A stretch of DNA of 64,000 nucleotides, taken from positions 106,268,001-106,332,000 of the forward strand of contig NC_042997.1 of assembly GCF_006345805.1 (NCBI RefSeq), given 5' to 3'. A model generated the notes under the pieces. The model had not been told where the DNA came from. It saw only the letters and a list, made by a program, of their open reading frames with translations, and did no database searches. The DNA is from Octopus sinensis (lineage: Eukaryota). Shown here in pieces: positions 320-63,052 of the stretch (position 1 is its first letter; each line of letters begins with the position of its first letter). The position numbers were made by a program, and so were the translations under genes.

Positions 320-463
320 GCATCTGAAAAAGACACATCTGACGGTGCTCCATCTGGTATCAGAAGCGTTAAGGACCAAGCCAAACATCTGAACAAACTA
401 CAATCAGAAAGTGACCTGCAGAAACTAACTAGCCGAAAGCATGACAAATCAAAATCTGACAAA
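320..463 (+). CDS. SOWAH: Internal coding exon, 144 nt, phase 0-0: ASEKDTSDGAPSGIRSVKDQAKHLNKLQSESDLQKLTSRKHDKSKSDK
   Basis: Acceptor gatgttttgcag at 308-319 and donor GTAAGC at 464. Coding-like composition inside a pyrimidine-rich flank, and in frame with the next exon. Linkage to SOWAH is inferred from strand and phase. Confidence 0.75.
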
Positions 464-9830: not shown

Positions 9831-10581
9831 TTGCTTATTATGTATATACTGACTTATTAACCATATATACAATTAGCATGTCTTTGCACCTTGTATTTCA
9901 CAACATGGAAAATTAATTACACTTGCAGTTTCTCGGTTCTCGTTACCAATCATGCATGGTTTTGTAGCCTGTTCAAATTACAATGTTGTTATTGTTGATT
10001 TTTGTTTTGAAAGAAAAATGTTTATAGATTTTTTTTTCTATCTTTCTTTTGTCTTTCGGTTGTTTTTATTAAATATTATTGTTTGTTTTTCTGGCTTGAT
10101 ATTTCATTTTGCTTTTTTTTTTTCAGCATTCTTTAAAGATTCTAAAGGCGGGTATACTCACACATTTGTATAAATTCTTTACACACATATGTCAAAAAAG
10201 GGGAGCTTCAAAGGTTCTTGTTGTTTAGCCCCAGGTCAACGCTGATCAAGGAGACTTGTGATTAAAAGCATTCCTGTTGTAACCATTTCAACATTTGGGT
10301 TAGATCTAGAACTATATTATCTAATATACCATATCCTTTATTTAAAACTGTAGATGTGTGGTAGGTAATGTGAAGAATATTTGGTTGCTATTTCTATCAA
10401 ACTGATACACCACCATGTAAAGCCTTTCTCACTGGCTCAACCTTAGAAGTTGCTTAAACTATTTAATGTATCAGCAAAATCAACACACTCATTTATCATT
10501 TTTAATGTTTTGGGGGTTTTTATTTTTAAATAGGTATCTCTTAATTCAAACAATACAACCACTTGAAAAAGTCTTTATTAA

Positions 10582-17940: not shown

Positions 17941-20644
17941 TCATCATCATCATCATTTAGCGTCCGCTTTCCATGCTAGCATGGGTTGGACGGTTCAACT
18001 GGGGTCTGGGAAGCCAGAAGGCTGCATCAGGCCCAGTCTGATCTGGCAGTGTTTCTACAGCTGGATGCCCTTCCTAACACCAACCACTCCGTGAGTGTAG
18101 TGGGTGCTTTTTACGTGCCACCCACACAGGTGCCAGACAGGGCTGGCAAACGGCCACAGACGGATGGTGCTTTTTATGTGCCTCCGGCACGGGGCCAGGC
18201 GAGGCTGGCAACGGCCACGATCGGATGGTGCTTTTTACGTGCCACCAGCGTGGGGGCCAGGCAAGGCTGGCAATGGCCACAAACGGATGGTGCTTTTTAC
18301 ATGCCCCCGGCACGGAGGCCAGTCGGGGCGGCGCTGGCAACGGTCACGATCGGATGGTTTGCTTACTTGTCACCGGCACTGGTATCACAGCTGCAATTTC
18401 CATTGATGTTGATCGACTTCGATTTTAGTTCTGCTTTCTAATATCTGATTTGATTTGATTTGATTTTCACTTGTCTCAATGGGTTTTCAGAAGTGGAGTT
18501 TTGTGTCCCAAGGAGGAAAGGTATGTATAAGTTGACTGGCTACATACCAGGTAGGGGCCACGGGTCTTCTCACGCACAGCATACTTCCATAGGTCTCGGT
18601 CTCTAGTCATTTCCTTGGTGAGACCTAAAGTTCAAAGGTCGTGCTTCACCACCTCGTCCCAGGTTTTCCTGGGTCTACCTCTTCCACAGGTTCCTTCAAC
18701 CGCTAGGGTGTGGCTCTTTTGCACAGAACTATCTTAAGCCATACCAGCGCAAACGTCTCTCTTGCACACCACAACTGATGCTTCTTAGGTCCAACTTTTC
18801 TCTCAAGCTACTTACACTCTGTCGAGTATGAACACTGACATCCATCGGAGCATACTGGCTTCATTTCTTGCGAGCTTACGCATATCCTCAGCAGTCTCAG
18901 CCCATGTTTCACTACCATGTAGCATGGCTGTTCGTACACATGCATCATACAGTCTGCCTTTTACTCTGAGCGAGAGGTTTTTTGTCACCAGCAGGGGTAA
19001 GAGCTCTCTGAACTTTGCCCAGGCTTTTCTTACTCTAGCAGTTACACTTTCACCACACCCACCCCCGCTACTGACTTGGTCACCTAGGTAGCGGAAGCTA
19101 TCAACTACTTCTAGTTTTTCTCCCTGGAATGTGGTAGAAGTTGGTCTCTGCACATTTTCAGTGTTTATTGCTCCTAAGCATCTGCCACAAACAAAAACTA
19201 TTTTCCTAGTTAGCCTTTCTTTAACATTGCTGCACCTCTTATGTGTCCATAGCTTACACTTGGTGCATCTTATAGAGTTTCTACCTACACCTTTTCTACA
19301 GATCGAGCAGGGCCATCTACCTGAAGGTGTTTGTGATTGGTCTACCTTCCTACTTATTAGGACTTTGGTTTTGGCTAGGTTGATTCTAAGGCCCTTCGAT
19401 TCTAATCCTTGTTTCCACACCTGAAACTTCTCCTCCAGTTCTGATAGTGACTCAGCAGTTAGAGCAAGGTCATCAGCATAGAGGAGCTCCCAGGGGCATC
19501 CTGTCTTGAATTCCTCCGTTATTGCCTGGAGGATTATGATAAATAGGAGGGGACTGAGGACTGAACCTTGGTGGACCCCAACCTCTACCCAGAATTCTTC
19601 ACTGTACTCGTTGCCAACCCTCACTTTACTAGCAGCGTCTCTGTACATGGCTCGCACAGCTCTCACTAACCATTCATCTATCACTAGTTTCCTCATTGAC
19701 CACCAGATAAGGGATTGGGGGACCCTGTCGAAGGCTTTCTCCATGCCAACAAAAGCCAGGTACAGGGGCTTATCTTTGGCTAGGTATTTCTCCTGCAGCT
19801 GTCTTACCAGGAATATAGCATCGGTAGTACTTTTCCTTGGCACGAACCCAAACTGTATCTCATCTAAGCTAACTCTCTCTCTAATTAGTTGGGCTATAAC
19901 CGTCTCCGTAACCTTCATTACTTGATCCAGCAGCTTGATACCCCTGGTTAACTATACAGGTGACTAGGCTATAGCCGACACTACCAGATATTTTGAGCAT
20001 CTCTGCAGTAATTCCTGATGGGCCTGTGGCTTTCCCTGTTTGTAATTGCCTTAACTACTAAGGAACTGTCAACTCGGATTGCTGGTCCCTCTGTTGGGTT
20101 GACAGACTCTCTTTATCCCATTCATTTTCCTTATTCAGCAACCTTTCATAGTGGCGTCTCCAAACCTCTCTCTTTGCATCCTCATTTAGCGCAAGTGAAC
20201 CATCATCCTTGTGAACACATTTCTCTCCTACGTCACGATTCTCTCTCACACACTGTCTTGCAACACGAAATACCTCAAGTCTTTCATCCTCACAGCGCAG
20301 AACATTGGCAAATTTTTTCTTATATGCTTCCCCTCTGGCTAAATACACCTGCTTCCTAGCGTCCCTTCTGGCAGTCTGATACACTTCCCTGCTACCACCG
20401 TTCTTCCTGTTTCTTTTGTCTAATAGCCCTGTCAACAATATTGTTCCACCACGTTATTTTGGGTCTTGAGGGGACTTTGCACCAACCACAGATCTGGTCA
20501 GTGGCTCTCAGCAGGTTGTCCCTTAGAGACCTCCAGTTGTCTTCTATCCCATGTGAAGCTATACCCCCTTCTATTTCGTCAAAGGCTTCAAGTAATATGT
20601 CTCTAAATCTCTGTCCATTTGCAGGATCTTTAAGCTTCCAAGCT
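17941..20644 (-). mobile_element. 5'-truncated RTE-clade LINE with disrupted ORF, tandem-repeat 3' UTR and (ATG)n tail
   Basis: Reverse-transcriptase motifs QFGF...STTDAIF, MEKAFDRV, GVHQGSVLSPLLF and LLYADDLAL in ORF 18812-19918. Upstream fragments at 20058-20438 and 20392-20640, internal deletion near 19940, about 60-bp GATGGTGCTTTTTA repeats at 18100-18370, and a (CAT)n tail at 17941. Confidence 0.95.
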
Positions 20645-20670
20645 ATATATAGCTTTAAGCTATATATATG

Positions 20671-20724
<54 letters not shown>

Positions 20725-20905
20725 ATAATAAATATTAGGGAATAAATCCAAATTTACAGGGAAAAATCAGATTTAGGATTGAATCCAATTTTATAGTAAA
20801 ATATTATATAATATTAATTAGAGACAAAACCACTATTTTGCAAATCAAACAAGGAAAGACTTAATCAATACATAAAAAAAATTTTAATATAAAGTAAATA
20901 AATCA

Positions 20906-22818: not shown

Positions 22819-25000
22819 CCCCTTGCCTGGCAATGGCAAGATATCTCGTTTTTGACCTTTTTCGGAGTTGGACGAAATACCTCATCCAAAAGTTATTCTC
22901 TCAAATAATGGCTGGGACATAATATCTCATCTAACTCAACTCTACAGCACTTTTCAGGTATAAGCGAGTATGTTTGTCCCAATCATGCATCTGGCAGTGC
23001 ATCACGCCATTCATGCTCTCACTTTAGCCAAGTGATTCATGTCTCACATCATTGCACTTACCAGTCATTCATCATTAGCACACACATACATGCATATGTT
23101 TGCTCATTCTAAGGACACATTTTGCATTTTTGCTTTTTATTTTTAAAATGAGCAGCGACAGTGAAATTGATGATGTGGATTTTGCTAATCTGGACTCCTC
23201 AGATTCTAGTGCAAGTGAATAGGATCCAGAAGTTACTGTCCCAAATGATGATGATGATGATAATAATGATAATGATGATTCCTTGCTTGCTGCCAGACAA
23301 TGGTATCAGCTTCCTGTTGGAGATAATCTTGCACCTGCTTCTCTACTATTTCCTTTTGTTGGAGACCCAGTAATATCAATTGATGGTGATGTATCAGAAA
23401 TGACTCCTCTTGATTTATTTCCCTTTATTTTGATGATGATTTAGTTGATTTTGTGTGCAGTGAGATAGATTTGCACAACAAACTTCACCTAACGATAAGA
23501 ATCGGCACCCTGTTACAGTTAGAGAGATGCATTTATTTTTTGCTGTGAACATGCTTGGAAGTATAATAAAGGCACCAGATTTGGAAATGCAGTGATCAAA
23601 GCATCCTCTTCTTGAACAGCCAATTTATGCAACTATCATGTCCCTGAAGCGATTTTGTAAGATTAAACAATATCTACATTTTCTTGATAATCACTCTTAT
23701 GACAAAGCAAGTCACCTGCATCCTAAGTTGCATAAAATATATGATATATACTCTAAGCTACAAGAGAAGTTCCAAAGTTTGTACACTCCAAAACGAGACA
23801 TTTCTGTTGATGAAAGCCTCATTTTATACAAAGGCAGATTGGGTTGGATTCAATATTTATCCTTGAAGAGGAATAGATTTGGAGTTAAATATTTCATGTT
23901 ATGTGAATCTGACTCTGGCTATGTTTGCAAATTTATAATTTATTGTGGAAAGGGAACCCAAAATGGCAACAAGTATCAAGAACTTACCATGGCACCATGA
24001 ATAGTGATGAATCTCATGGAACCTTTGCTGAGAAAAGGATATTGCCTAACTGTGGACAATTTTTATGCTTATCCAGAACTAGCTGATATTTTAGTAGCTA
24101 ATTACACAGATTTTCCAGGAGCAATATGTGTCACAAGAAAGGATTTTCCAAAAGAAATCAAGCAAGCAAAGCTAAAAATAAGGTGAAATTTGTGCTTTTC
24201 AAAGAGGAAAGGTGATGGCACTAAAATGGAAGGATAAAAAAGATGTTACTATGATCTCTACCATTCATAATCCATCTATGATAGATGTAAGCATTCCAAG
24301 GAAACAGATAATAAAGCCACAAGTGGTTTATGATTACAACTTCACTGTGGGTTGAGTTGACAAACTTGACCAACATTTGGTTGATTACCCCTGAAAATGT
24401 GGAAGGAGGTATTACAAGGTGTTTTTTCACATGATAGACTTGGCAGTGTGGGATTCATAGATACTTTATAAAGAATCATTGACACAAATGAGACACAGCA
24501 CAAATCATTGATACAAATGAGTCACAGCAAAACCAATGTCTGATATGAAATATTGACTTGAACTTATTGATTCCCTCTTCAAAGAAAATTATGTTGATGT
24601 TCCTTGTTGAGAAGCTGGAAGACCATCTTCATCTCACCTTACTCAGTACTCATATGGACATTTTCCCATGGATATTCCTCCTAGAGAAAAGGAGAAATTT
24701 CCCCCAAGAAAGTGTGTGCAATATGCGAGAAAAAAAACAGGATGCCTATGGAAAACCAGTTCACAAAGAATCCCATTATATGTGTAAAATTTTCAAAGTT
24801 CCATTATATGATACTCCAGGTTTTGAAGCATTTTATTCAAAATAGCCATGTAATGAAAGAGAAGTACTACAAGTAAAGCGAGTAATGTTTCTTTGCTTTT
24901 ATTTTATCCCTTTCTTTTATTTAAAACACTCTTTCCAATTTTTTTCCATTTAATTTTTTTTTTTTTTTTTACAGAAGCTGAGATATCTCGTTTTTGCTTA
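22819..25000 (+). mobile_element. piggyBac (PGBD4-like) DNA transposon with pseudogenised transposase at about 23148-24845
   Basis: Acidic N-terminus from ATG 23148; motifs ISVDESLILYKGRLGWIQYLSLKRNRFGVK, LTVDNFY, KWKDKKDV and YDYN..GVDKLDQ; remnant C-terminal Cys/His region; stops and frameshifts. Degenerate left end TGAA|CCCC and GAGATATCTC-like motifs at both ends. Confidence 0.9.
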
Positions 25001-26154: not shown

Positions 26155-26208
26155 AATAAAGATGGTGCTGATGATGATGATGCAAATTCCGCTGGTGGAT
26201 TTGTCACA
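26155..26208 (+). CDS. SOWAH: Internal coding exon, 54 nt: NKDGADDDDANSAGGFVT
   Basis: Long T-rich tract then ttcttgcag ending 26154; donor GTAAGT at 26209; phase 0-0; joins directly to LSDEQKVWM. Confidence 0.85.
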
Positions 26209-27429: not shown

Positions 27430-27531
27430 CTCTCTGATGAGCAAAAAGTTTGGATGAAGCAGTCAGCTAATTGTGATTATCAAGAACTAAGTAAACTTCT
27501 ATCAAAAAATCCGTCCCTTGCTAAAGAGAGG
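27430..27531 (+). CDS. SOWAH: Internal coding exon, 102 nt: LSDEQKVWMKQSANCDYQELSKLLSKNPSLAKER (helical segment before the first canonical ankyrin motif)
   Basis: Acceptor tttttttaattaaacag ending 27429; donor GTAAGT at 27532; no stops; SOWAH-like peptide. Confidence 0.9.
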
Positions 27532-30586: not shown

Positions 30587-30598
30587 AGTTTTATTAAT
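30587..30598 (+). CDS. SOWAH: 12-nt microexon AGTTTTATTAAT = Ser-Phe-Ile-Asn
   Basis: Long polypyrimidine tract about 30530-30564, TGC at 30566-30568, atccAG acceptor, donor GTAAGTAAA at 30599. Supplies the expected (D/S)F-I-x residues after the conserved Arg. Confidence 0.82.
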
Positions 30599-32229
30599 GT
30601 AAGTAAAGAAATTGTCTCCATTCTAATTATCATAATGCTTTAAAATTATTTTCCAGTCTTTTTTTTTTTGCTAATTGTTAGAAAATTAATGCATTCTACT
30701 TTGTTATATGCAATCACATGTGAAATGCAACTCCTAAATATAAATGGAAACAGATTGAAAATGTTAACCTTTAGTTTGATAAGACCCCACATTTTACAAA
30801 ACCTCATTAAGTTTGTTTGAGACCTAGAAGTGAACCTTTGTTATATTTTTAATACAATCATTTTAATCTCACTCCCTGCTGTTTTTGCCATGGTAATTAC
30901 TAAAAGTAAAATAAGGCATAAATATACAGAGAGCATTGTTTAAAAATATAACTAAAGCCTGCATATGGCCCAACCAATGCCGCTATAGAACATGTATGTT
31001 AAATGAGGATAATTTTATATATGTGCCCATATCCATTAGAGTCCAACAAACTGTCTATAAGGCTAAGCGCTTTATAGATGCAAAACCATTGGTCACTCTA
31101 TGACTGGCCATGTAATTAACTTCCTATAAATTATATATATATATATGTATGTATGTACGTACACACACACATGCACACACACACACTCATAGAGAGAGAA
31201 AGATGTGGTTGTGTGGTTAGGAAGGTTACTTTTAGGTTTAGTCTCATTGTGTGGTACCTTAAGCAAGTGTCCCTGTCATATAAGCAGTGTTATTCATTTC
31301 TAATTTTTCGTGAAAACATGCCTGGCAATGGGACAGTATTATCTTGCTTGGAAACCGGTGAGGGTAGGCAAGAGAAAGGACATCCAGCTACAAGTAATCT
31401 GCCCCAATAAACTCTGAGCCTTGTAGGCATGGAAAAGTAAACATTGAAAGAGCTTTCAGCTGTAGGAAATCTGCATCAACAAATTCAATCTAACCCAAGC
31501 GAGCACAGAAAAGTGGATGTTAAATGATGAGTTTTATAGTGATGATGATGCTGAATCGCAGTAGAAACTTAGTCAAAAGAAGCAGGTTGTACATATAGTA
31601 ATAGTCAACAATTGGTGAGCCCTAAATGACAGTCGATAAACCCAGCTCTGACTTCAACATAGGATGGCTTCCATTAGTATATATATGCTGAAATTTAATA
31701 TTTATTCTATGCAATGGTGGCATGATGATTAATAATGACACTGAAACCCAGTCTAGAGTTCAAAGACTAAAGAAAATTAGATAATAGATTGATCAAAATG
31801 ATATGAAGAATAAAGATACATGAATGAGGAGAGTAACACTTGAGAGCATTTAATTTAGTTTAGCAATAACAGATGTAAGAGATTCATTTGTATAATCAGT
31901 CTCAAGGACTTTAGAGAAGAGTTGAAAGAGATTAGCATTTAAGATGCTTTTCTAAAGCTGGAATGCCTTATGTCATTAACTGAGAAATTTTCTTGAGAGG
32001 ATAAGATTTTCTTTTGCTTTCTAGGAATCTGGAATAAAGGTAAAAACAAATTATTAAAATTGAGACTGAAATTGTGTGGCAGCGTAATTTTACATAATGT
32101 ATGTGTTATGTCAAGCCACAATTGGAAAGAGACAAATACACACACACACATGCACACACACAAGCAAGAAATACCTATCTGTCTGTAATTTTCTCGCCTC
32201 CCTCTCTCTCAGTATATATATATATATAT

Positions 32230-33218
32230 CATCATCATCGTTTAGTGTCCGTTTTCTATGCTGGCATGGGTTGGACAGTTCGACTGGGGTCAGGAAAGCC
32301 AGAAGGCTGCACCAGACTCCAGTCTGATTGGGCAGTGTTTCTACAGCTGGATGCCTTTCCTAACGCCAAGCACTCCAAGAGTCTAGTGGGTGCTTTTTAC
32401 ATGCTACCAGCACGAGAGCCAGTCAAGGCATTGCTGGCATTGGCCATGTTCAGATGGTGCTTTTTACATGGCATTGGCACAGAAGCCAGTCAGGACGAGG
32501 AGGCTGGCATCGACGATGTTCTGATGGTGCTTTTTATGTGTCACCAGCAAAGGGACCACAACTACAATTTCCATTTGATTGTAATTTGATTTCATTTGAT
32601 GTTGCTGTATTTGACTTAGTAGTTCTCCTCAAGCATGGCATGTTGCCCTATGATCCAAGGGTACTTTTGAGTTGGCTGGTTATGCGACACTGGTGTAGGT
32701 TACAGCTATGATCTCCCTTTATTTGCCAGGTCTTCTCAGTCACAGCATATCTCCAGAGGTCTCTGTCTTTCGTCATTTCCTCTGTGAGGCCCAGCATTCA
32801 AAGGTCATGCTTCACCACCTCATCCCATGTCTTGCTGGGTCTCCCTCTACCCCGGATTCCTTCCACTGTTTGGGAGTGACATTTCACACAGCTTCCCTCA
32901 TCTGTCCGTAATACTTGACCATACCAGCGCAAATGTCTTTCTTGCACACCACGTCCAATGCTTCTTATGTCCAACATTTCTTTCAGGGCGCTTACACTCT
33001 GTTTGTGTGTGCACACTGACATTACACATCCAGCGGATCATGCTAGCTTCATCTCTTTCGAGCCTATGCATGTTGTCAGCAGTCACAGTCCATGTTTCAC
33101 TGACATGAAGCATGGCAGTTCGCATACATGCATCATACAATCTATCTTTCACTCTGGGCAAGAAGCTCTTTGTCACCAGTAGGGGTAGAAGCTGTCTGAA
33201 CTTTGCCCAGGCAGTCCT
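32230..33218 (-). mobile_element. Shorter 5'-truncated copy of the same RTE family (C-terminal ORF plus 3' UTR)
   Basis: RVKDRLYDACMRTAMLHVSETW and GRGRPSKTWDEVVKHDL peptides; same 3' UTR and (CAT)n tail; flanked by (TA)n on both sides. Confidence 0.92.
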
Positions 33219-34056
33219 TATATATATATATATATATATTGTATATACAAATCACTCACAAGGCTTTGGCCCAGAAGGTACCTGCTCAAGATACCATGCA
33301 GTGGGACTGAACCTGAAAGCATATGGTTAGCAAGCAAACTTCTTAATCACACAGCTACATCTGCACATATATATATGGGTGCAAGCATGGTTTTATGGTT
33401 AAGCAGTTTGCTTCCCAATTACATGGTTCCAAGTTCAGTCCCACTACATGGTACCTTGAGCAAATGTCTTCTATAACCCTGGGCTGACTAAAACCTTTAA
33501 GGGATTTAATAGTTGGAAACTAAAAGAAGCTCGTCTTTGTGTGTGTGTTCTTATCTTGACACCACCTGATAGTTGTACATGTGTGTCACTATCACACAAG
33601 AAATGTTATTCATTTCCAATCTTCTGCTAAAACATGTTAGGTCATGGGGAAATAACCTTGCTTGGAAATAGATGAGGATTGATGACAAGAAGTTGCATCT
33701 GGCCATAGAAAATCTTCCCTGATAAACTCCATCCATCAAGTTTTTTCTCACAGAGCACTAGTTAATTCTAGAATATAACAGAGGACACTTAGCCAAGTGG
33801 AAACCATGGAAATCACATAGAAACCATGCTTTTTGTGTTGACTATTATAGTATTCAGAGGGATAGAACATTGAGTGCTTAGTCAATATACATTGCTTTGT
33901 ATCAATATCACAATGTGTATATGTGCTTGTGTATATTTATTTGTTTAGCTGTAAGAGAAGCTGAAGATCAGTCAAAATTTGTAATATATGTATAATGTCG
34001 TTTTTCTTTCATATTTTGGTATTACTGTTGAATTTCTGAATTTGGAATCACTTCAG

Positions 34057-34059
34057 GGT
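34057..34059 (+). CDS. SOWAH: 3-nt microexon GGT = Gly
   Basis: cacttcAG-GGT-GTAAGTAAA at 34049-34068 with a pyrimidine tract at about 34001-34017. Provides the Gly of the ankyrin G-x-T-A-L-H motif, in the correct order. Confidence 0.72.
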
Positions 34060-35961
34060 GTAAGTAAATTTTCTTTTCTCATTGTTAAAAAAAGATATGC
34101 AAATCTTTGAAATAACTCTTTATATTAAAAGCCTCCCTGTTATAATGTATTTGGGTCAGTTGTTGGCAGTAGGAAAGAATAATACTGAAGCCAATTAATT
34201 TGCATTCTGTCTGAAAGTTGTATCAATAAGAAGCCATTGTAATAAGCTTAGTGTTCCTGTATGACAAAGCTCTCATTTATCAATTAATCTTTTTCTATTC
34301 ACAACAAAATGTGTTTCTACTAGAACCAACAACATTCTCAGAAATTATTGGAAAATGTTGAGTACAAATGTTTATCTCATGCATGGAGATGTTCTAGGAT
34401 TTGATCTAGTGTTTTAGAGTTATTTGATTAAAACTGATTGGCATGGGGGTTAGTTTCCGAAGCAGTTTTTACAAATCTGGAAAATATAGTTTTCTTTTTG
34501 TAATTGAATAATGAAAATAGAAATAAAGTTTTCAAAAATCATTTTGTTACTCTTTAAACTTTAGTTGCAATTACTCCCTGTCTACTTATCCAGACATAGT
34601 TCTTTTCTGCTGATTGGGGCTGCTAAAATACATATGGGACTTAAATATGCTTTAGTGGGGTTGAAACTGTTGTCAGTGCACAAACAAGATCACCATTACT
34701 GTGCCCAGTGGTAAGCTGGCAAAATCATTTGCATGCTGGACAAATTTTGCCAAGGTCAACTTTGCCTTATATCCATTTGGAGGTCGATTAAATGAGCACC
34801 AGTTGAGCTCTGGGTCAAAGTAATTGACTAGCCTTATCCTCCCAAATTGCTGGTAAAAAAATTACTGTGCCCAACAAAGGCATAACATTTTCACTCTACT
34901 TTGTTTATTTCTTTGATGATTGAATTTTTCTGCTAAATTGTGATGTAGCTTCATCAATGCTGAGAAGAGTAAACTTGTCATACAATTTTTGAAATTTTGC
35001 TTTTCAGTTGCTCAGTCTGTTCATCCATGCTAGTGAAGCTTCTTTCCCACATCTTGCTCATGACTTGTTAAGTGTTAAGGTTAGAGTTATGGATTAAGAT
35101 AAACATGCATTGTCCATTTCGAAATGATATTTACTGTTATGATTATTTTAAAAGACATCATCATTGCAGGTGGAACCACTTCATACGAGTGTCATCTCTT
35201 GTGTTCTTAGGAATATTATATTTCAAGAAAGTTTCTTATTAGAATATAGTATATATTACATAGTGTTTTGTTGTGTGAAGCGCAGCATATCACTATATGT
35301 ATTTTGCATTGTATGCCTCAGCCTTTTTGCTATTGCATTGGTTGGAGATGATCTTTTTATTAATAGTTATATATTAGTTTAGTACATTAAGTGACAAAGT
35401 GAAGATAGCCACTCAATATGAGTTTGAAACATGAAAAAAAGCAGTATGATGCTGAAGAAATTGTAGGCTTTTATATGCATGTGTTTTGCAGATGTGGTGG
35501 CCGGTGGCCAAACACAGCAGTAACTATGACCTGTAGTCAAAATTGAATAGAAGTCTGTAAAAGATAAAATGATATTAAAGCTGGATTCATTCATTAAGCA
35601 CTGCAGTCTTGCATCACAAAGTTGTTCTTAACCTAGCATTCTTCAAGATATGTGAATCAAAGGACAGTTAAGAAATGCTTAAGATTAGTTACACATAGCA
35701 AGCCTAAATTAAGTATCACTGGGCAGGCCCTTCTGACTTAGCAGCCCTGAGACTATAGAAAAGAGTGCAGTAAAGGACATTTGATGTTAATATCTTGAGG
35801 CAGATATCAGCCGAAAAGAAAACCCCTAAAACAGAAACCTTAGAAAGCCCTAGATGTTTGGAAAATATTTTATCAGCGACCTATGCTCTCAGAGACGATG
35901 TGATTAATAACACCCTAACTAAGAAATAAAATGAAACCTATTATTCAGTAAAAGAAATTAA

Positions 35962-36462
35962 CCCTTTAGCATTCATACTACTCTGTCAACTGTATTACTG
36001 GCACTCCATCAATTACAATGACAAGGGTTCCAGTCATTCCGATCAAGGAAACAGCCTGCTTGTGAAATTAACGTGCAAGTAACTGAGCACTCTACAGACA
36101 CAGTGTGTGACAAGGCTGGACCTTTGAAATACAGGTATTACTCATTTTTGTCAGCTGAGTAGACTGGAGCAAAGTGAAATAAAGTGTCTTGCTCAAGGGC
36201 ACAATGTGTCACTGGGAATTGAACTCATGACTTTGCAATCATGAACCAAATACCCTAACCACTAAGCCACACACCTTCACTGTGTGTGTCAACTATAATG
36301 CTCGGTTATTCACATTGTTTTGTGGTTTTGAGATTTCAGTGATGTGATTGTTTATTTTACAATGACATTGTAGAGTAGGTGTAAGAGGTTGGATACAACC
36401 AGTTTGAACATTAAATGGGTGAAATATTTTGGCCGGATATGACAGGTTTAAATGTTAAAGGG
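35962..36462. mobile_element. piggyBac-type MITE interrupted by a minus-strand SINE (about 35995-36290)
   Basis: TTAA|CCCTTTAGCATT start and TTAAAGGG|TCAA end; same internal sequence as 10582-10804 in the opposite orientation. Confidence 0.7.
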
Positions 36463-36696
36463 TCAATGTGCCTAATAACATTTTGTATCTGACATAGTTT
36501 GAGCTTATGCTCTATGATATTTGTAATCTTAATATATTTAGTTTAACATAAATTTATGTCTGTATGCATGCATATATATGTTTGTTAACTTTTTAATGTA
36601 TTTCATACTTTTTTCACTACTCTCTTTCCCTATTTTTTTTTATGACTTGCTAATTTATCCTGGAACTCTGAATATTTATTTGGTTTCCTCAAACAG

Positions 36697-36699
36697 TAT
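36697..36699 (+). CDS. SOWAH: 3-nt microexon TAT = Tyr
   Basis: tttggtttcctcaaacAG-TAT-GTAAGTAAA; branch-point-like CTAAT at 36650-36654; upstream pyrimidine tract about 36601-36641. Provides the aromatic residue of G-[YF]-T-A-L-H. Confidence 0.72.
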
Positions 36700-41439: not shown

Positions 41440-42300
41440 ACTTCTCCACCACCACTCCTATTACATCACCTTCACCATCACTATCATTGCCACTATCATC
41501 AATTCATTCACCACCGTCCCTGTCACCTCTGTGCACCTTTGTAACTACTACTGCCTCCATCACCACCATCATCACTACTACTACTGCCACCATCACCACT
41601 ACTACTACAACTAACACCACCATCACTACTACTACTGCTACTACCTCTTCCACCACCATCAACACTACTACTGCTGCTAACACCTCCACCACCATCACTA
41701 TTACTACTAACACATCCACCACCCCCATCACTACTACTACTACCTCCATCACTATTACTACCTCTTCCACCACCATCACTACTTCTACTACTACCTCCAC
41801 CACCATCACTATTACTACTGCTACTAACACCTCCACCACCATCACTACTATTACTGCTGCTCCTAACACCTCCACCACCATCACTATTACTACTAACACA
41901 TCCACCACCACCATCATCACTACTACTACTGTCATCATTGCTGCTATGATAGATCTTTTGTTGCCACAACAGTCACTCTCACTGTTGTTTTTGCCATCAT
42001 TAACACTATTACCTTTGTCATTACCACCATCACTATAGCAGTCACTGCCACCACTGCTTCCTTACGACCACTACTACTATCACTAACACCATTATCTCAC
42101 TCATTACAATAGCCATTTCTCTATTACTATTATCATCATCATCACCACCAGCACTATCCATCTATCACTACTATTATCACCATCACTATCACTTCTCTAT
42201 CACTAGTATCACTCTCCCTACCACCACAACTACATCTCTATCACTACTATCACCACCACTACTGCCACTATTAGTAATGCTATCCCTGTCACAACTACCA
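41440..42300. repeat. Degenerate (ACY)n trinucleotide minisatellite
   Basis: ACT/ACC/ATC triplets with recurring higher-order blocks such as AACACCTCCACCACCATCACTATTACT; open on several frames only because stop codons are absent. Confidence 0.9.
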
Positions 42301-55103: not shown

Positions 55104-55193
55104 ACTGCACTTCATTGGGCAGCAAAACATGGCAAACCAGATGTTGTTAAATTATTGTGTGGAAAGCCTGGTGTTAACGTGGACCAAAAAACA
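55104..55193 (+). CDS. SOWAH: Internal coding exon, 90 nt: TALHWAAKHGKPDVVKLLCGKPGVNVDQKT (ankyrin repeat core)
   Basis: Acceptor attttctttgcag ending 55103; donor GTAAGTAT at 55194; textbook ankyrin TALHxAAxxG...VVKLL...G..VN pattern. Confidence 0.93.
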
Positions 55194-55296
55194 GTAAGTA
55201 TTGTTTTGTTTTGATTATGTTTAATGAGAAATATTGCATGTGGACTAAAAACATAGACATAGCTGCATAATAGTCCTTGTGGAGAAATTGCGATAT

Positions 55297-55329
<33 letters not shown>

Positions 55330-56151
55330 GCATGCATTTTGTGGAATATTATTGGAGAGTTATATAATAACTCATTTGTGATACACTCCAATAAACATCC
55401 CTGATACGAATATGCATGGAATGGCAGCCCAGAGGAAAACTTTGTTGACCAGCTCTGTATGGGCATGAGATGTTGGTGTGCTGACCTCATGCTCTTATGC
55501 AGGATCATGAAGGATCATGAAGTTAGGCCAATCCAAGCAAGCTCAGCTTACTTTCCCACAATCCTCAGTTATCTGAAAAATATCATGTTTCACATTTTAC
55601 TTTTTCGTGCTGGTGCAGACTATATTTGTAAACTATTCTCACTCTTGTTTTACATTGGAGAAATATGGCTGTCAGGCTAATTCGTTATATTCACTTTAAT
55701 GAAATTCCTGAATAACACAAAATGTTGTGGAACCTTTCATATTCTTCTATATAAATCATGCCCATGGGTATTTATGTCAATCTTTTCAATACTCTTTAAC
55801 ACTATGATTTAATAGCACTGCTAACACAGTAGAACACAGTATTGACTTATAAAAGCTTTAAATGTACTTTGTAATATATTATGGTTGCATAATGAAATGC
55901 AGTTCTCATACAGGTCATTAATAAGTGATATGATACAAAACTGAACAAATTTGATACGATACGAAACTGAACAAATTTGATCCTTTTCATATATGACTGG
56001 TGAATCAGCTGAAGCCAGTGCATCACTGTTCACACATACAAGTCTACAGGTGGTAGACTCTGCTTGCATATTTCAAGTCAGCAAGTCATTTTCTGATACA
56101 TTTGGTGTCTCAGTTGACACTTCTCAATTTGTTATATTATCATCATTGTTT

Positions 56152-56259
56152 TACTCTTTTATTTGTTTCAGTCATTTGACTGTGGCCATGCTGGAGCACC
56201 GCCTTTAGTCAAGCAAATCGACCCCAGGACTTATTGGGGGGACAAACACACAAACACAT

Positions 56260-56322
<63 letters not shown>

Positions 56323-56488
56323 TATATACGACTGGCTTCTTTGAGTTTCCCTCCACCAAATCCACTTACAAGACTTTGGTCGGCCCGAGGCTATAGTAAA
56401 AGACACTTGCCCAAGGTGCCATGCAGTGGGATTGAACCCGGAACCATGTAGTTGGTAAGCAAGCTACTTACCACACAGCCACTCCTAC
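56152..56488 (-). mobile_element. SINE family A with internal deletion
   Basis: Reverse complement of the 50374 copy, lacking part of the 3' body. Confidence 0.9.
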
Positions 56489-58584
56489 TGTCTACTGTTT
56501 TTTTGCTTGTATGAGTTGTACAGAAGGTTGGAAAGGAAATGGTATTCATTTACAACAATCATGCGACATCAAGACAAGGTGATACAGACATAGACACACT
56601 TATATGGAAGTGCACACAATGGGATTCTTTCAGTTTCCATCTACCAAATCCACTCACAAGACTTTGGTCAATCCAGGGCTATTGTAGAAGACACCTCTTG
56701 TACAAGGTGCTGTGCAGTCGGACTGAGCTCCAAACTATGTAACTGTTGATCCATGTGCTGTTATATTTGCTGTATATTATGCACTGTTGTTATCGGTATA
56801 TCTGGAGTTAGTAGGCCTCAGCTTACAGATGTGGTGGCACTACTGCCATGCCTGCAGTTATTGTTTTCAATGCTGATTCATCAGGAATTGTGAGCTAGTA
56901 CTGATACATCTGCTGACACATATATAGCCGTTTATCACTTCTCTCAAATTGGTACCATTATTAAACTAAACCTGTCGCCACTACCACCACCACTGCTTCT
57001 TTCTTTGCTTTGTGTTCCAACCACCCAACAACGACAATGGAGAAAATTATGTTAAGTACACAGATTACTGTAGTCTTTATGTTAGAATCTGAACTACCAC
57101 AGAAGAGTTCACGCACTTGTGTATGTATGTGTATATATGTATATACTGTTTGTGCATGTACATGTTATAGGTGCATATGTATGTGTTGTTTGTGTATTTC
57201 TGCTTGTATTGAAGAAGAGCAGAGAAGAATAAAGCTTTTTACATAAGTTGTGTAAACATTAAATTAACTACTTTATATAAAAACCAACATTAATAACAAA
57301 TGCTGCATCAATAACAACAATAGAAAGACTTACTCAGATTAAAAAAGAAAAAAAAATAAGAGTAAAATACTGCTAAGTGATAAATAAATAATGAGATAAA
57401 GTTCTGAGTTTAGAGATAAGCAATGCAAACCAAATTTATCTTATTTCAACATTCAAAAAGTCGTTTTTGCTTTCACAACAGAACTTATTTTCCTGAATTG
57501 ATTTTCAAAATATATATGTTACTTTTTAAATAAATAAAGATGCAGCATGCATTTATTTATCTCTGTTACCCATGCTTTCATAATGTCATTGTATTTAAAA
57601 CCACCTGCTCTTCACTCTTCTCTCTCATCTGCATCCATCAGGATACTCAGCCATGTTTGTTTACCCATAAACAGGCAGCAGGAGTAGGAAGAGGAATAAT
57701 TTGTGCTGTAAGCAATGGCAGCACTAAGGAATCATGCAGTACTGAGTTCAGTTCTTCTTCTATCAGAAAAATGTTATCTATGAAAGGCCAACATCTTACC
57801 CATAGAAGAATTACCCCTCCGTTTAATGTTACAGAAGCAGACACGGCTTCTGTGGTTATAAGTTTGCATTGCAACCGCATGGATCTGGGTTCATACCCAT
57901 TGTGTCTTCTGCTATAGCTTCAGGCCTACCAGTAATTTGCAAGTGAATTTACTTAACAGAAACTATATGGATATAGGCGGCAAGCTGGCAGAAATGTTAG
58001 CATGCTGCTGTAATATTTAGTGGTATTTCGTCTGCCGCCACATTCTGAGTTCAAATTCCGCCGAGGTCAACTTTGCCTTTCATCCTTTCGGGGTCAATAA
58101 ATTAAGTACCAGTTATGCTCTGGGGTTGACGTAATCAACTTAATTCCTTTGTCTGTCCTTGTTTGTCCCCTCTATGTTTAGCCCCTTGTGGGCAATAAAG
58201 AAATAAAAAACTATATGGTTATGCATGTCTCATGCATACAGACACACATATGAGTGTGTGTGTATCACGTATAAAGCACCCAGCACAGTCTATAAAATGG
58301 TTGGCATTAGGAAGAGCATTCAGACATAGAAACAAAGCCAAATCAGACTAGAACCTGGCACAGCTCTCTGACTTGCCAGCTCAGATCTATCTGTTCAACC
58401 CATGTCAGCATGGAAAATGGATGTTAAAGGATGATGATGATATATATATTTGCAACTACAATATTTTATATTTTATTTCTACTTCCATTCTCTTATTTCC
58501 CTCTATATTCCCTATCTCCTCCTTTTCCATAATAATTCCTTACTTCAAACTCAAATATTTACCTCTGTTTAATCATCTCACATC

Positions 58585-58632
58585 GTCTCTGATGAAGGGA
58601 TATTCCTAATATCCCAGAAACAGCTGTAAGAC
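58585..58632 (+). ncRNA. Minimal type I hammerhead ribozyme motif, sense to the host pre-mRNA
   Basis: GTCT-CTGATGA-A-GGGATATT-cct-AATATCCC-A-GAAAC-agct-GTA-AGAC. Intact core, perfect 8-bp stem II, stem I GTCT/AGAC, palindromic stem III ACAGCTGT; predicted cut after 58628. The element (about 58450-58710) is bounded by (TA)n. Confidence 0.7.
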
Positions 58633-58705
58633 TATATCTATATCTTTTTTCCTTATAAATGTCCTGAAAACTCCTCACAGCCTTGGCTTTGTTATCTCAT
58701 TTTGT

Positions 58706-58749
<44 letters not shown>

Positions 58750-61700
58750 GTAAGAGCCAGGAATTGAAGTGTAGGAAGAAAGTTAGCTTCGAACAATTCT
58801 GCCCACTATAGAACATATGTAACCCGGATCTTACATACTCCATTCTGTAACTCTTGTATATACATATATGAATATATATGTATGTATGTATGGTGTGTTC
58901 ATTTGTGCACAAATATTGACATTCTACAGCATCGCCAAGTAAAACAGTGATTATATTTCCTTTCCTTGTTGACAGTAAGAGTGGTCAGTTTGTGTTTTCG
59001 AAGAACTGTGGAATAAAAATAAAATCCCTAAGCTGAAAAAGAAAATGTCACATAAGGTCCATCAGCAGGAAGAACATTCAGTCATAAAAATCCCTGCCTC
59101 AAATATGTCCTCATCCAAAGTTGCATGCTAATATGCAAAATGGACATTGAGCACACAAATAAATGAAAGTTATGGATAAGTACTTATCTTACGAACTATT
59201 TTGATTTATTAAAAAGATTAGTTATTAGCAGTATTGTTTCTTCTGACATAAATAATAATAATAAACCTTTGTACTATAGGTGTAAGGCCTGAAATTTTTT
59301 GGCAGAGGACTAATTGATTGCATCAACTCCAGTGCTCATCTAATACATATTTTATTGACCCCCAAAAAGATGAAAGGCAAAGTCGACCTTGACAGATTCT
59401 GGACTCCAAGGTCAACTTTGCCTTTCATCCTTTTGGGGTCAAATAATGACGATGTGGATGAAGTACTGTATGAGGTTATGATCAAGGATCACTGATCAGA
59501 TAATGAGTTGAAGCTTTACTGTAGTTATTGTATGGTACTGCAGAGTAAAGCAAGCAATCCCCCTTAATTGCCTCAGCCTGTTTAGCTGACAAACAGGTTC
59601 CACACTTGTTTTACCTACCTCTACATCAATGAATTTTGTCAAACACATGCAAGTATAGAATTATAGCTATCAAAACAATGCTACTCATTTTATTGGATCC
59701 AGAGATATGAAAAGCTAAGTCAATGCAGGCAGAATTTGAATTCAGTACAGGGTGTATGAAGCAAGATAACATAAGCAACTTCTTTAGATCTCTACCATTT
59801 CTGACCATCTTGAACTAACAGAGAAGCCTCTAATGTAGTCAACCAACTTGCTAGAAATAGCAGCCAAATGTAATACATATTACAACACTCTTCTATCTAT
59901 CTGAATAATGTTGTCCTAGCTATACAATACACAGAGAAAAAAATATATATTGATGGGGATTACAGCTGGAATGCCTTTAATTATTATTGTGTAGTACCAG
60001 GGCTGACCTGAGGCTAAACAGTCACAACAATAACAGCACTACTCATCAAGCTTTATCAAAGTAAAAGAAATGAAAAAAAAAATAATAATATTGATTTCTG
60101 TCTAAGCTCCACTGAGAATTGCATACTACAATGTATTTGTTGATTCTCATAATGCATTAGAAAAAGAAAAAAAAACACTAACTAACTAAATAAATAAATT
60201 ATAAGGATTTCCAACTATTGCCAAACCTTTCTTTGGTTTGCCTCTGGAGAAATCTGCCGACTCACAATTTGCTAAGATTGTAATTATCTCAACCACAACA
60301 AAGAAAATGAAGAGGAGGAAAAAAAAAATCAAAAAAAACAAAAATCTAAAAGTGACTCTTGTTTCTTTTTTGTTACCTCATTTATTTGGGAGAGAAAACC
60401 TCAAACATTATTCATATTTTAGTATATCACCGAGTGCAGGCAGATATTTTCTTGTCTGTAATTGCTATAATTACAAGTTACAGTTTGTTAGTTTAGCGGT
60501 ACAGCAAAACTTCACCATTTAATTATTCATTCGTTTCCATTCAAAAACCTCCTGGCTTGCATCTTTTCATCAGTTCCATTAACTACTCACACAAAATATC
60601 CTGGTTCCCACTATTCGCCAAAGATATGGCTAACTGCTCTATAATAATATCATTATGTTATCAGGATTTACTAGACACATTTCTCCCCTGCTCTCTCTCC
60701 ATGCAAGTCACATTGGTAACTACTTGTAGAAAGCCTTTTTCTCTCCCTCTACCCCTATCATAATTTCTTGGAATGTTAAATATTTTACAACTGTTATGAT
60801 TATGTATTTATCCCAAAGCTTATCATCTTACTAACACAGTTACTCAATAACAGTGACAACAGCAATGACAATCTGACATATCATTTACTATTAAAGATAG
60901 ATGCTGTTTGTTTTGGTTCCACGTGTAATCTTTGATTCAATTCTTTCTGCTCTTTCTTAATCACCACTTTTCATGTGGTATTTCATTCCAAACTTGCTTC
61001 AGCTTCTGGCAACAAATCAGTTTGTCTCTTAAACATTACAGTAAATTAATCAGTAAACCTTATTGAATGTCATAAATACATAATATCTCTTACATGTCTG
61101 CTCAAAAGGTTTCTTCCACTGCAGTGTTTTAAAAACAGATGTCTTCTCTATCACTAACCGCTTAATTGTAAAATCATCAGTGTAATTTTTTTATTCTTTT
61201 TTTTAATAATTTTTGTTTTCTTAGTGAATAAAACAATAGATTACCAGCTGGCTCAGAGTACATGGCATCATATCTTATTATTGGAGTGGTGTGGTGTGTT
61301 ATTTAAGCAAAATTTTATCTCTCTAGAATAGACACAAAATGTTTATTGTGATGGCGATTATGATAATCTTAATGTGAATGATGATTGTAAGAGAGGGTTG
61401 AAAGCATGTAGCCTGGTGGTTAGGATGTTGGGCTCACAATCATAATGTGATGGATTCAGTTTCTGGATCCAGTAGTGTATTGTATCCTTGAAAAATACAC
61501 TTCCTTTGATGTTATTCTATTCTGTTGAACTGAAGTTTAATACCAGCTTTGTGCTAGTGCAGCTCTTTCTCCTCCAGCTGTCACATTTCTTATGTTCCAC
61601 TGGATCAAAGTGTGGGAAAGCTGAGACAGTGTCTGGGTCTGCCAACAACTGCATAGATACCCAAAACAATAAGCAAAAGCCTGTCTGTGATGGCTACAGT

Positions 61701-62765: not shown

Positions 62766-63052
62766 TTACCTCTGTCTTAGCGAAGGCAGTGGTATTGCTT
62801 TCAGTCATGTTTGTTTGTTTGTCCCTGGACAAGATATCTCAAGAACCACTGGATGGATTTAGATGAAACTTTCAATGGCACAAACTGATTAGGATTCTCG
62901 ACAAGGATTCTGGATTATTTTTTCTGTTTTATTACCTAATTTTTGAGAGCAGTCGGGTTCATTTTCAGTATTCCCGTTTGTGAGAGCAGTCAAGTCTATT
63001 TCAGATATTCTCATTTTAAAAATCATCTTCGGCTAATCGTTGAGAGGACATT
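62766..63052 (+). mobile_element. Helentron-associated non-autonomous element (HINE/DINE-like), internally deleted
   Basis: Starts TTACCTCTGTCTTAGCGAAGGCAGTGGTA (subterminal hairpin), then a (GTTT)n tract, then GGATGGATTTAGATGAAACTTT. Confidence 0.6.

What the first reader, a model, noticed from the sequence alone, without database searches (positions are those of the whole stretch)
30587..36699. Ankyrin hairpin assembled from a 12-nt and two single-codon (3-nt) microexons
Seen in sequence: the exon ending ...LAKER (27531) and the exon starting TALHWAAKHG (55104) lie 27.5 kb apart and lack the six residues SOWAH proteins carry between them. In that gap, in the right order, are three YAG-exon-GTAAGT blocks: AGTTTTATTAAT (SFIN), GGT (G) and TAT (Y). 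Spliced, they give R-SFIN-G-Y-TALHWAAKHG. Established knowledge, recalled: vertebrate SOWAH has RDF-x-x-G-F-T-x-LHWAAK at this position, and 3 nt is at the lower limit of known exon size. Inference: two consecutive one-codon exons would be missed by ab initio predictors and most read aligners, so existing annotations of this locus may lack G-Y.
Basis: partly seen in the sequence, partly recalled or inferred. Interest (0 to 1): 0.92.

Follow-up and report, generated by a model that had tools for sequence, protein, structure and literature searches.

The report
Real one-codon exons in octopus SOWAH
Three tiny exons of 12, 3 and 3 bases inside a 27.5-kb octopus intron really do supply six amino acids of an ankyrin repeat of the SOWAH gene; the same one-codon exons are present from sea anemone to fly and fish, and gene annotations often miss them.

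Summary
The window is the Octopus sinensis-type SOWAH locus. Between exon 27430-27531 (…LAKER) and exon 55104-55193 (TALHWAAKHG…) lie three exon-like blocks. They are 30587-30598 (SFIN), 34057-34059 (GGT, G) and 36697-36699 (TAT, Y), each with a YAG acceptor and a GTAAGTAAA donor. None of 2000 shuffles of the intron gave a G site followed by a Y/F site. All four O. sinensis RefSeq isoforms read KER-SFINGY-TALHW, so the product is already annotated for this species. The O. vulgaris and Argonauta hians models lack the six residues. The layout 102 | 12 | 3 | 3 | 87-90 nt, followed by 3+3 or 6 nt for the second ankyrin hairpin, recurs in genomic DNA of Haliotis rubra, Ictalurus furcatus, Actinia tenebrosa and Drosophila persimilis. 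It also occurs, partly fused, in five unidentified metagenomic animals. In D. melanogaster the orthologous 12, 3, 3 and 6-nt sowah exons are in FlyBase and were detected by RNA-seq. The exons are therefore real, ancient (older than the cnidarian-bilaterian split) and often misannotated. They are not a new kind of feature. How such exons are spliced is inferred (strong donors, probably stepwise intron removal), not shown.

The parts
320..463 (+). Upstream SOWAH coding exon (ASEKDTSDG…KSKSDK|gtaagc).
   Evidence: 100% tblastn match to O. sinensis SOWAHB residues 179-226. It carries DLQKL, the O. sinensis variant; the O. vulgaris model has DLLKL.
10127..10147 (+). Candidate alternative 21-nt exon HSLKILK. 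It is present in isoforms X1-X3 and absent from X4. The donor appears to be non-GT (AAG|gcgggt).
   Evidence: Peptide located, sequence read, isoform difference seen. The exon boundaries are inferred, not verified.
26155..26208 (+). SOWAH coding exon NKDGADDDDANSAGGFVT (54 nt; tgcag|…|gtaagt).
   Evidence: Exact peptide match to the O. sinensis proteins.
27430..27531 (+). Exon A, 102 nt, encoding LSDEQKVW…LAKER. It covers the helix region that precedes the first ankyrin repeat.
   Evidence: The homologous exon is also exactly 102 nt in Haliotis, Ictalurus and Actinia.
30587..30598 (+). 12-nt microexon AGTTTTATTAAT (SFIN).
   Evidence: Sequence is ccag|…|gtaagtaaa. It is the only one of four SFIN-coding sites in the window that is flanked by AG and GT. 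Orthologous 12-nt exons are NFTN in Haliotis, DFTS in Ictalurus and Actinia, DPAT in D. persimilis and CPAT in D. melanogaster.
34057..34059 (+). 3-nt microexon GGT (Gly).
   Evidence: Sequence is ttcag|GGT|gtaagtaaa. It is the only AG-GGN-GT site in the whole intron. Orthologous single-codon Gly exons were found in five named species and three metagenomic loci.
36697..36699 (+). 3-nt microexon TAT (Tyr).
   Evidence: Sequence is aacag|TAT|gtaagtaaa. Orthologous TAT/TAC/TTT single-codon exons were found in five named species and four metagenomic loci.
55104..55193 (+). Exon T, 90 nt, encoding TALHWAAKHGKPDVVKLLCGKPGVNVDQKT. This is the body of ankyrin repeat 1.
   Evidence: An acceptor immediately before the Thr codon is shared by many homologues.

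Best explanation
These are three genuine coding exons of the octopus SOWAH (sosondowah) gene. I read them as constitutive, which is inferred rather than shown. Spliced in order, they insert S-F-I-N, G and Y between …LAKER and TALHWAAKHG…. G-Y-T-A-L-H is the canonical start of an ankyrin repeat (the G-x-T-x-L-H turn), so the two one-codon exons encode the tip of the first ankyrin hairpin. The layout exon A (102 nt) | 12 | 3 | 3 | exon T (87-90 nt) | 3 | 3 (or 6) | next exon is inherited from before the cnidarian-bilaterian split. Lineages differ only by intron losses that fuse neighbouring pieces. Shown here: the sequence blocks, their statistical rarity, the identity of the spliced peptide to RefSeq proteins, the orthologous exons in five other named species, and RNA-seq detection in D. 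melanogaster. Inferred: how they are spliced. A 3-nt exon cannot hold U2AF/U2 at its acceptor and U1 at its donor at the same time (the steric limit discussed in PMC4317164). I therefore propose stepwise recognition. Each site has a consensus GTRAGT donor and a YAG acceptor behind a pyrimidine-containing tract. One flanking intron is removed first, joining the codon to a neighbouring exon, and the enlarged exon is then used for the next step. This resembles recursive splicing but leaves 3 nt behind each time.
For: Sequence and statistics. Product: all four O. sinensis RefSeq isoforms read KERSFINGYTALHW and are 100% identical to the window's exons. Given that peptide, 30587, 34057 and 36697 are the only AG…GT-flanked solutions in the intron. 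Homologues that lack the introns encode the same residues contiguously: Tara loci KDFINGYTALHW and vertebrate-type RDF(T/V)SGFTALHW. Orthologous microexons in genomic DNA: Haliotis rubra NFTN|GGT|TAT and CAC|GGG; Ictalurus furcatus DFTS|GGG|TTT and CAC|GGT; Actinia tenebrosa DFTS|GGG|TAT and CAT|GGG; D. persimilis DPAT|GGC|TAT and AATGGG; metagenomic L011, L019 and L037 G|Y, and L047 a fused GGTTAT. In Actinia the strict motif scan of the 1.2-kb intron returned exactly the three expected exons, in order, and nothing else. Third-codon positions vary (GGT/GGG/GGC, TAT/TAC) while the amino acid is kept, which indicates coding constraint. Transcript evidence: D. melanogaster sowah 12-nt, GGC, TAT and AACGGG exons are listed as RNA-seq 'reliable microexons', tagged FlyBase (PMC8042270 Table S4). 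Pfam: the Ank profile aligns from position 1 only when N-G-Y is present. Donors: all 18 microexons in the four fully mapped species are GTAAGT (14) or GTGAGT (4), whereas three of the four exon-A donors are weak (GTTGGT, GTACCC, GTGACT). This fits the reported need of constitutive micro-exons for strong splice sites (PMC4317164).
Against: I could not see octopus RNA reads. Inclusion in octopus rests on RefSeq (Gnomon) proteins, whose exon tables I could not read. Two cephalopod models (O. vulgaris, Argonauta) join KER/KEK directly to TALHW; I read these as annotation misses, but a real skipping isoform is not excluded. The strong-donor observation is partly circular, because my strict scan required GTRAG; only the T at +6 was free. 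The stepwise-splicing order is untested. Octopus introns here are 2.6-18.4 kb, so simple intron definition, which is plausible for the 86-500-nt introns of Actinia or catfish, is less obvious in octopus.
Confidence: 0.9

Rival explanations
1. The three blocks are chance matches to splice-site consensus in an AT-rich intron and are never used.
For: AT-rich introns hold many GT and AG dinucleotides. One further AG-NNN-GTAAGT site (28317, ATT, with a poor acceptor) exists in the same intron.
Against: 0 of 2000 shuffles gave G then Y/F. The spliced peptide equals the RefSeq protein. The same exons occur in five other named species.
Confidence: 0.01
2. G-Y (or SFINGY) comes from a different exon in the intron, for example a single 6-nt GY exon as in metagenomic locus L047.
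For: A fused 6-nt GGTTAT exon does exist in one unidentified animal (L047). Fused NG 6-nt exons exist in flies.
Against: An exhaustive scan of 27532-55103 found only AG|GGGTTT|GT at 46133, which encodes GF rather than GY and has weak sites. There is only one AG-GGN-GT site in total. Haliotis, the nearest mapped relative, has separate G and Y exons.
Confidence: 0.02
3. The microexons are real but alternatively used. Skipping one or more codons produces SOWAH isoforms with a disabled ankyrin repeat, and models that lack the residues reflect such isoforms.
For: O. sinensis isoform X3 differs from X1, X2 and X4 by one residue (F versus FA) at the equivalent place in the second hairpin. A transcript-like fragment (P0001) carries VSI there instead. 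The O. vulgaris and Argonauta models lack SFINGY and FA.
Against: All four O. sinensis isoforms keep SFINGY. The residues are kept in every lineage, including intronless copies. The models that lack them lack different subsets in a pattern typical of aligner failure: Ictalurus has DFTS+F but no G, Actinia lacks DFTSGY but has HG, and H. cracherodii differs from H. rubra.
Confidence: 0.12
4. Inclusion depends on a dedicated microexon activator (an SRRM4/eMIC-type factor binding UGC motifs just upstream of the acceptor) rather than on strong sites and ordered splicing.
For: The 12-nt exon has a TGC about 20 nt upstream of its acceptor. Such factors drive 3-27-nt neural microexons in bilaterians (established knowledge, recalled).
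Against: No TGC lies in the 22-30 nt read upstream of the G or Y acceptors in octopus, and it is inconsistent in the other species. The same exons exist in a cnidarian. The residues are structurally required, which argues for constitutive use.
Confidence: 0.1

Closest known systems
Drosophila melanogaster sowah (FBgn0036302) microexons, annotated in FlyBase and listed in Table S4 of PMC8042270.
   Same: They are orthologous. A 12-nt exon (TGCCCTGCAACG), a GGC exon and a TAT exon lie in that order upstream of the TALHW exon, with a 6-nt AACGGG exon after it. D. persimilis genomic DNA shows the same layout. Two of the ten 3-nt exons detected genome-wide in fly belong to this gene.
   Different: In flies the second hairpin is one 6-nt exon (NG). 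Haliotis, catfish and Actinia have two 3-nt exons there (H, G). Octopus introns are much longer (up to 18.4 kb). The fly exons appear only in a supplementary list, and the paper's main text does not mention sowah.
Conserved microexon clusters in plants (PMC8831610).
   Same: They are groups of adjacent very short coding exons inside conserved protein domains. They trace back hundreds of millions of years, have GTRAGT donors, and are widely missed by genome annotation.
   Different: They belong to a different kingdom and different genes. The plant cases include 1-nt exons and are linked to detained, post-transcriptionally spliced introns, which was not examined here.
RPS24 consecutive microexons in human (PMC11162997, PMC12686416).
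   Same: Several microexons lie in a row between two ordinary exons.
   Different: Those are alternatively spliced (abstracts) and, as I recall, affect the C-terminal end of the protein. Here the exons sit inside a folded repeat and appear constitutive.
Isolated 3-nt exons (mouse Ncam, Drosophila TnT, TLN1, MAP4K5).
   Same: They are single-codon exons flanked by canonical splice sites and conserved across species.
   Different: They are single exons, and at least the Drosophila TnT one is alternatively skipped. SOWAH has two adjacent ones, twice, in one gene, conserved across phyla.
Recursive splice sites (ratchet points) in long introns (established knowledge, recalled).
   Same: An acceptor lies almost against a consensus GTAAGT donor inside a long intron, which implies stepwise intron removal.
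   Different: Ratchet points are AG|GTAAGT with no exon left behind. The window has no YAGGTAAGT site at all. Here 3 nt are retained in the mRNA at each step.
Neural SRRM4/eMIC-dependent microexons of 3-27 nt (established knowledge, recalled).
   Same: They share the size class and the deep conservation.
   Different: Those are regulated, neural and use UGC motifs. Here no consistent UGC motif is present, the exons occur in a cnidarian, and the residues are structurally required.

Membership tests
SOWAH / sosondowah ankyrin-repeat family | Two C-terminal ankyrin repeats whose first repeat carries the (D/N)F-x-x-G-(Y/F)-TALHWAAKHG signature. | tested here: met
   Window exons plus microexons give SFINGYTALHWAAKHG. 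Pfam Ank families hit the O. sinensis protein. Named SOWAH proteins of fish, molluscs and insects share the motif.
SOWAH / sosondowah ankyrin-repeat family | N-terminal SOWAH winged-helix domain (Pfam PF25877 WHD_SOWAH). | tested here: met
   Precomputed Pfam hits list PF25877 for the O. sinensis protein P0154 that matches the window, and for the Argonauta, Haliotis, Ictalurus, Actinia and Drosophila orthologues. The domain itself is encoded upstream of the window. My own hmmscan copy did not return PF25877.
SOWAH / sosondowah ankyrin-repeat family | Identity to a protein that a curated source names SOWAH. | tested here: met
   Three window exons are 97-100% identical to XP_036359357 'ankyrin repeat domain-containing protein SOWAHB [Octopus sinensis]'. 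The only mismatch is one residue past the donor of exon T.
SOWAH / sosondowah ankyrin-repeat family | Linkage to Iroquois/Irx genes, with Irx enhancers in SOWAH introns (Maeso et al. 2012, as cited in PMC12311624). | not tested
   The window covers only the middle of the gene. No Irx search was done, and the Maeso paper is not held in the library.
Coding microexons (3-nt class) | Length of 30 nt or less, flanked by a canonical AG acceptor and GT donor, and in frame with the neighbouring exons. | tested here: met
   Lengths are 12, 3 and 3 nt. All acceptors are YAG, all donors are GTAAGT, and all are phase 0.
Coding microexons (3-nt class) | Inclusion in mature mRNA. | tested here: inconclusive
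   The evidence is indirect. The RefSeq proteins of this species contain the residues, and the fly orthologous exons were detected by RNA-seq. No octopus reads could be searched.
SRRM4/eMIC-regulated neural microexons | A UGC motif close upstream of the acceptor, and tissue-regulated inclusion. | tested here: not met
   No TGC lies in the 22-30 nt read upstream of the G and Y acceptors, and one lies about 20 nt upstream of the 12-nt exon. Regulation could not be tested.
Recursive splice sites (0-nt ratchet points) | Acceptor and donor directly juxtaposed (YAG|GTAAGT). | tested here: not met
   YAGGTAAGT occurs 0 times on either strand of the window. The sites here keep 3 nt between AG and GT.

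The most novel reading that the evidence does not exclude
SOWAH carries the most extreme conserved microexon cluster so far noted in animals. There are four single-codon exons (G, Y/F, H, G) plus a 12-nt exon, placed at the tips of both ankyrin hairpins. The cluster has been kept since before cnidarians and bilaterians split, it is maintained as an obligatory ordered-splicing unit, and it has not been described in the literature despite being partly present in FlyBase and RefSeq. If so, it is a ready natural model for how the spliceosome handles exons far below the steric limit, across introns from 86 nt to 18 kb.
Probability: 0.5. Interest if true: 0.75.

Novelty: new member of a known kind. 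Interest (0 to 1): 0.62.

Why it matters
There are three reasons.

1. Annotation. The same six (plus two) residues are missing, in different subsets, from current gene models of O. vulgaris, Argonauta hians, Haliotis cracherodii, Ictalurus furcatus, Actinia tenebrosa, D. persimilis, and apparently from salmonid, spider and planthopper models. These proteins are therefore deposited with a broken ankyrin repeat. A microexon-aware template (102|12|3|3|87-90|3|3) would repair them.

2. Splicing. Two adjacent 3-nt exons, occurring twice in one gene and kept for more than half a billion years through large changes in intron length, form a stringent natural test of exon and intron definition and of the order of intron removal.

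3. Intron evolution. The pattern of fusions records stepwise intron loss from a very fragmented ancestral structure. Examples are a 6-nt GY exon in L047, a 6-nt NG exon in flies, a fully fused sequence in Tara plankton, and intronless vertebrate-type copies. The gene's introns are reported to house Iroquois enhancers (as cited in PMC12311624).

Tried and rejected
1. The first protein search with the 70-aa spliced peptide gave only four short hits and no junction-spanning octopus protein.
P0001 was used instead, and it led to the Argonauta model.
3. Look-ups of P0001, of a window LINE ORF and of the Myzus protein found nothing on record.
4. The Argonauta and spider genes are longer than 100 kb, so no DNA was returned and no second cephalopod intron could be aligned.
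5. Termite-gut metagenome loci have the acceptor before TALHW, but exon A is not within the 7.8-9.2 kb available. A conserved cag|GGA|gtgagt about 2.9 kb upstream, and a 9-nt tag|TCGATGGAY|gtgagt block, could not be fitted to the model, and no convincing Y exon was seen.
6. L029 and L001 (mollusc-like) show no G or Y candidate in the 0.7-4.7 kb available.
7. The taxon of L011, L019, L025, L037 and L047 was not resolved by the last protein search. Their NG 6-nt exon resembles the arthropod state.
8. A search of window 55194-64000 for the F and A exons of the second hairpin found no credible site. They lie beyond the window.
9. Maeso et al. 2012 (Sowah-Irx block) is not held, so I could not check whether that paper noted the microexons.
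10. No paper in the library contains both 'sowah' and 'microexon'.
11. Rfam found nothing in the window.
Full report
OBSERVATION. The window holds, on the + strand, an exon ending …GCTAAAGAGAGG|gtaagt at 27531 (…SKNPSLAKER) and an exon starting gcag|ACTGCACTTCATTGG at 55104 (TALHWAAKHG…). Three exon-like blocks lie between them. They are ccag|AGTTTTATTAAT|gtaagtaaa (30587-30598), ttcag|GGT|gtaagtaaa (34057-34059) and aacag|TAT|gtaagtaaa (36697-36699). The implied introns are 3055, 3458, 2637 and 18,404 nt.

CHANCE. The + strand of the whole 64-kb window has only two YAG-NNN-GTAAGT sites, and they are these two. It has one YAG-N12-GTAAGT site, which is the SFIN block. In 2000 dinucleotide-preserving shuffles of the 27,572-nt intron, 31 contained a Gly-type site and 74 a Tyr/Phe-type site. 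None had a Gly site upstream of a Tyr/Phe site. Under the loosest definition (AG-GGN-GT) the intron has a single Gly candidate, 34057. The only possible 6-nt alternative (46133) encodes GF and has weak sites. Of four places in the window that could encode SFIN, only 30587 is flanked by AG and GT.

WHAT THE LOCUS IS. A 109-aa fragment that is 100% identical to exon T (P0001) was used for an exhaustive search. This recovered a 521-aa Argonauta hians protein named SOWAHB-like. A search with that protein recovered the Octopus sinensis SOWAHB isoforms. Window exons 320-463, 27430-27531 and 55104-55193 are 100% identical to those isoforms over their coding parts, and exon 26155-26208 matches the same proteins exactly. 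Exon 320-463 carries DLQKL, the O. sinensis variant, where the O. vulgaris model has DLLKL. The proteins carry the WHD_SOWAH domain and ankyrin repeats. The window is therefore the middle of an O. sinensis-type SOWAH (sosondowah) gene.

THE PREDICTED PRODUCT EXISTS. Ab initio predictors cannot place 3-nt exons, so I infer that these models rest on transcript alignments. I could not read the exon table or any reads. The O. vulgaris model (CAI9715648.1) and the Argonauta model join KER/KEK directly to TALHW, and both also lack two residues in the second hairpin.

COMPARATIVE EVIDENCE. A degenerate scan of metagenome contigs for TALHWAAKHG gave 42 loci. Many have an acceptor immediately before the Thr codon. 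Vertebrate-type loci read RDF(T/V)SGFTALHW without introns, and Tara plankton loci read KDFINGYTALHW in one exon. Three unidentified animals (L011, L019, L037) have cag|GGC or GGG|gtaagt followed by tag|TAT or TAC|gtaagt within 250 nt upstream of the TALHW exon. L025 shows the Tyr exon before its contig ends. L047 has one 6-nt GGTTAT exon. All five also have a 6-nt AATGGR (NG) exon before the GYTPLH exon.

Genomic loci of named species were then fetched.
- Haliotis rubra: exon A (102 nt), then NFTN (12 nt), GGT, TAT, exon T (90 nt), CAC, GGG, then GYTPLH.
- Ictalurus furcatus: 102 nt, then DFTS, GGG, TTT, 87 nt, CAC, GGT.
- Actinia tenebrosa: 102 nt, then DFTS, GGG, TAT, 87 nt, CAT, GGG. The strict scan of its 1.2-kb intron returned only these three exons, in order.
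- Drosophila persimilis: exon A, then DPAT, GGC, TAT, exon T, AATGGG.
- D. melanogaster: sowah exons TGCCCTGCAACG, GGC, TAT and AACGGG, in that genomic order on 3L, are tagged as FlyBase-annotated and listed as RNA-seq 'reliable microexons'. They account for two of the ten 3-nt exons found in the fly genome (PMC8042270 Table S4).

Synonymous third positions vary (GGT/GGG/GGC; TAT/TAC; CAC/CAT) while the residue is kept. The architecture therefore predates the cnidarian-bilaterian split, and lineages differ by fusions.

ANNOTATION GAPS. Deposited models lack different subsets of these residues.
- H. cracherodii lacks GY and HG, whereas H. rubra has both.
- Ictalurus has DFTS+F but lacks G and HG.
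- Actinia lacks DFTSGY but has HG.
- D. persimilis GL24938 lacks exon A, DPAT, G, Y and NG.
- The salmonid, Channa, spider and planthopper models lack the G and Y/F residues at the first hairpin; the fish models also lack the 12-nt exon's four residues. Some also lack one or both second-hairpin residues, while the planthopper model retains NG.
- The Myzus model reads DPIT-Y with no G.
This patchiness is what aligner failure produces, not what regulated skipping would produce.

FUNCTION AND MECHANISM. G-Y-T-A-L-H is the start of the ankyrin consensus. The Pfam Ank profile aligns from its first position only when N-G-Y is present. The microexons therefore encode the hairpin tip of repeat 1, and the H/G (or N/G, F/A) exons encode the tip of repeat 2. 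All 18 microexon donors in the four fully mapped species are GTAAGT (14) or GTGAGT (4), while exon-A donors are weak in three of four species. My strict scan did require GTRAG, so this is only partly independent. The result matches the reported dependence of constitutive micro-exons on strong splice sites and on U2AF-type tracts, and the steric argument against simultaneous occupation of both sites of a very short exon (PMC4317164). I therefore infer stepwise removal of the flanking introns, as in recursive splicing but leaving 3 nt each time. The window has no true ratchet site (YAGGTAAGT). No consistent UGC motif precedes the acceptors, and the exons exist in a cnidarian, which argues against an SRRM4-type dedicated activator. 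None of this mechanism was tested.

NOVELTY. Three-nucleotide exons, microexon clusters and their misannotation are known. The fly orthologues are in FlyBase and the octopus product is in RefSeq. I found no paper that mentions sowah together with microexons. The one paper likely to show SOWAH exon structure across phyla is not held. I file the finding as a new member of a known kind. The added observation is that the cluster of single-codon exons is eumetazoan-wide and frequently mis-annotated.

Noticed in passing
window 55194-55202, and beyond the window end: The second ankyrin hairpin is also built from tiny pieces. O. sinensis isoforms read DQKT-FA-GFTPLH (X1, X2, X4) or DQKT-F-GFTPLH (X3). 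Haliotis, catfish and Actinia have two 3-nt exons (H, G) at this place. The octopus F and A exons are not in 55194-64000. A transcript-like fragment (P0001) instead reads DQKT-VSI-GFTPLH, where VSI is the first 9 intron bases GTAAGTATT. That implies use of a weak donor 9 nt downstream, or an assembly artefact.
   Followed up: partly
window 10127-10147 (+): A 21-nt block cag|CATTCTTTAAAGATTCTAAAG encodes HSLKILK, the insert that distinguishes isoforms X1-X3 from X4. It is followed by gcgggt, so its donor would be GC rather than GT.
   Followed up: partly
L048, L049, L050 and window 27430-27531: The exon before the microexons is exactly 102 nt, with the same boundaries, in octopus, abalone, catfish and sea anemone. 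The TALHW exon is 90 nt in the two molluscs and in D. persimilis, and 87 nt in catfish and Actinia.
   Followed up: yes
L006, L008, L023, L024, L030, L034, L041, L043 (termite-gut metagenomes): A conserved tag|TCGATGGAY|gtgagt block lies about 570-630 nt upstream of TALHW, and in L023, L030 and L043 a cag|GGA|gtgagt lies about 2.9 kb upstream. Neither fits the expected G-then-Y order, and no Tyr exon was found. Exon A lies outside the contigs.
   Followed up: partly
L002-L005 (Tara Oceans and other marine metagenome contigs): KDFINGYTALHW is contiguous here, so all three introns are absent. The preceding coding piece (…LLQEK) is not followed by an obvious GT donor.
   Followed up: no
L019 1-45: The contig OBLV0100138592.1 begins with Illumina adapter sequence (…acactctttccctacacgacgctcttccgatct), left in a public assembly.
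   Followed up: no
window 18812-19918 (-), 20058-20751 (-), 23638-24000 (+), 32898-33176 (-): Transposon remains lie in the SOWAH introns. One is a 368-aa reverse-transcriptase-like ORF with a YADD motif, with related fragments nearby. Another is an ORF that looks like part of a piggyBac-type transposase (recalled resemblance, not tested). The RT ORF is not on record as an exact protein.
   Followed up: no
window 41487-42038: A long Thr/Ile-rich open frame on the + strand (Val-rich on the − strand) arises from a low-complexity repeat. It is probably not a gene.
   Followed up: no
P0001 residues 78-109; window 17968, 32253, 37068, 58390: The tail of P0001 (…FPCWHGFN…) leaves the SOWAH reading frame after ARCQ. 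It weakly matches several places in the window on both strands, which suggests a dispersed repeat in a retained intron or alternative 3' end.
   Followed up: no
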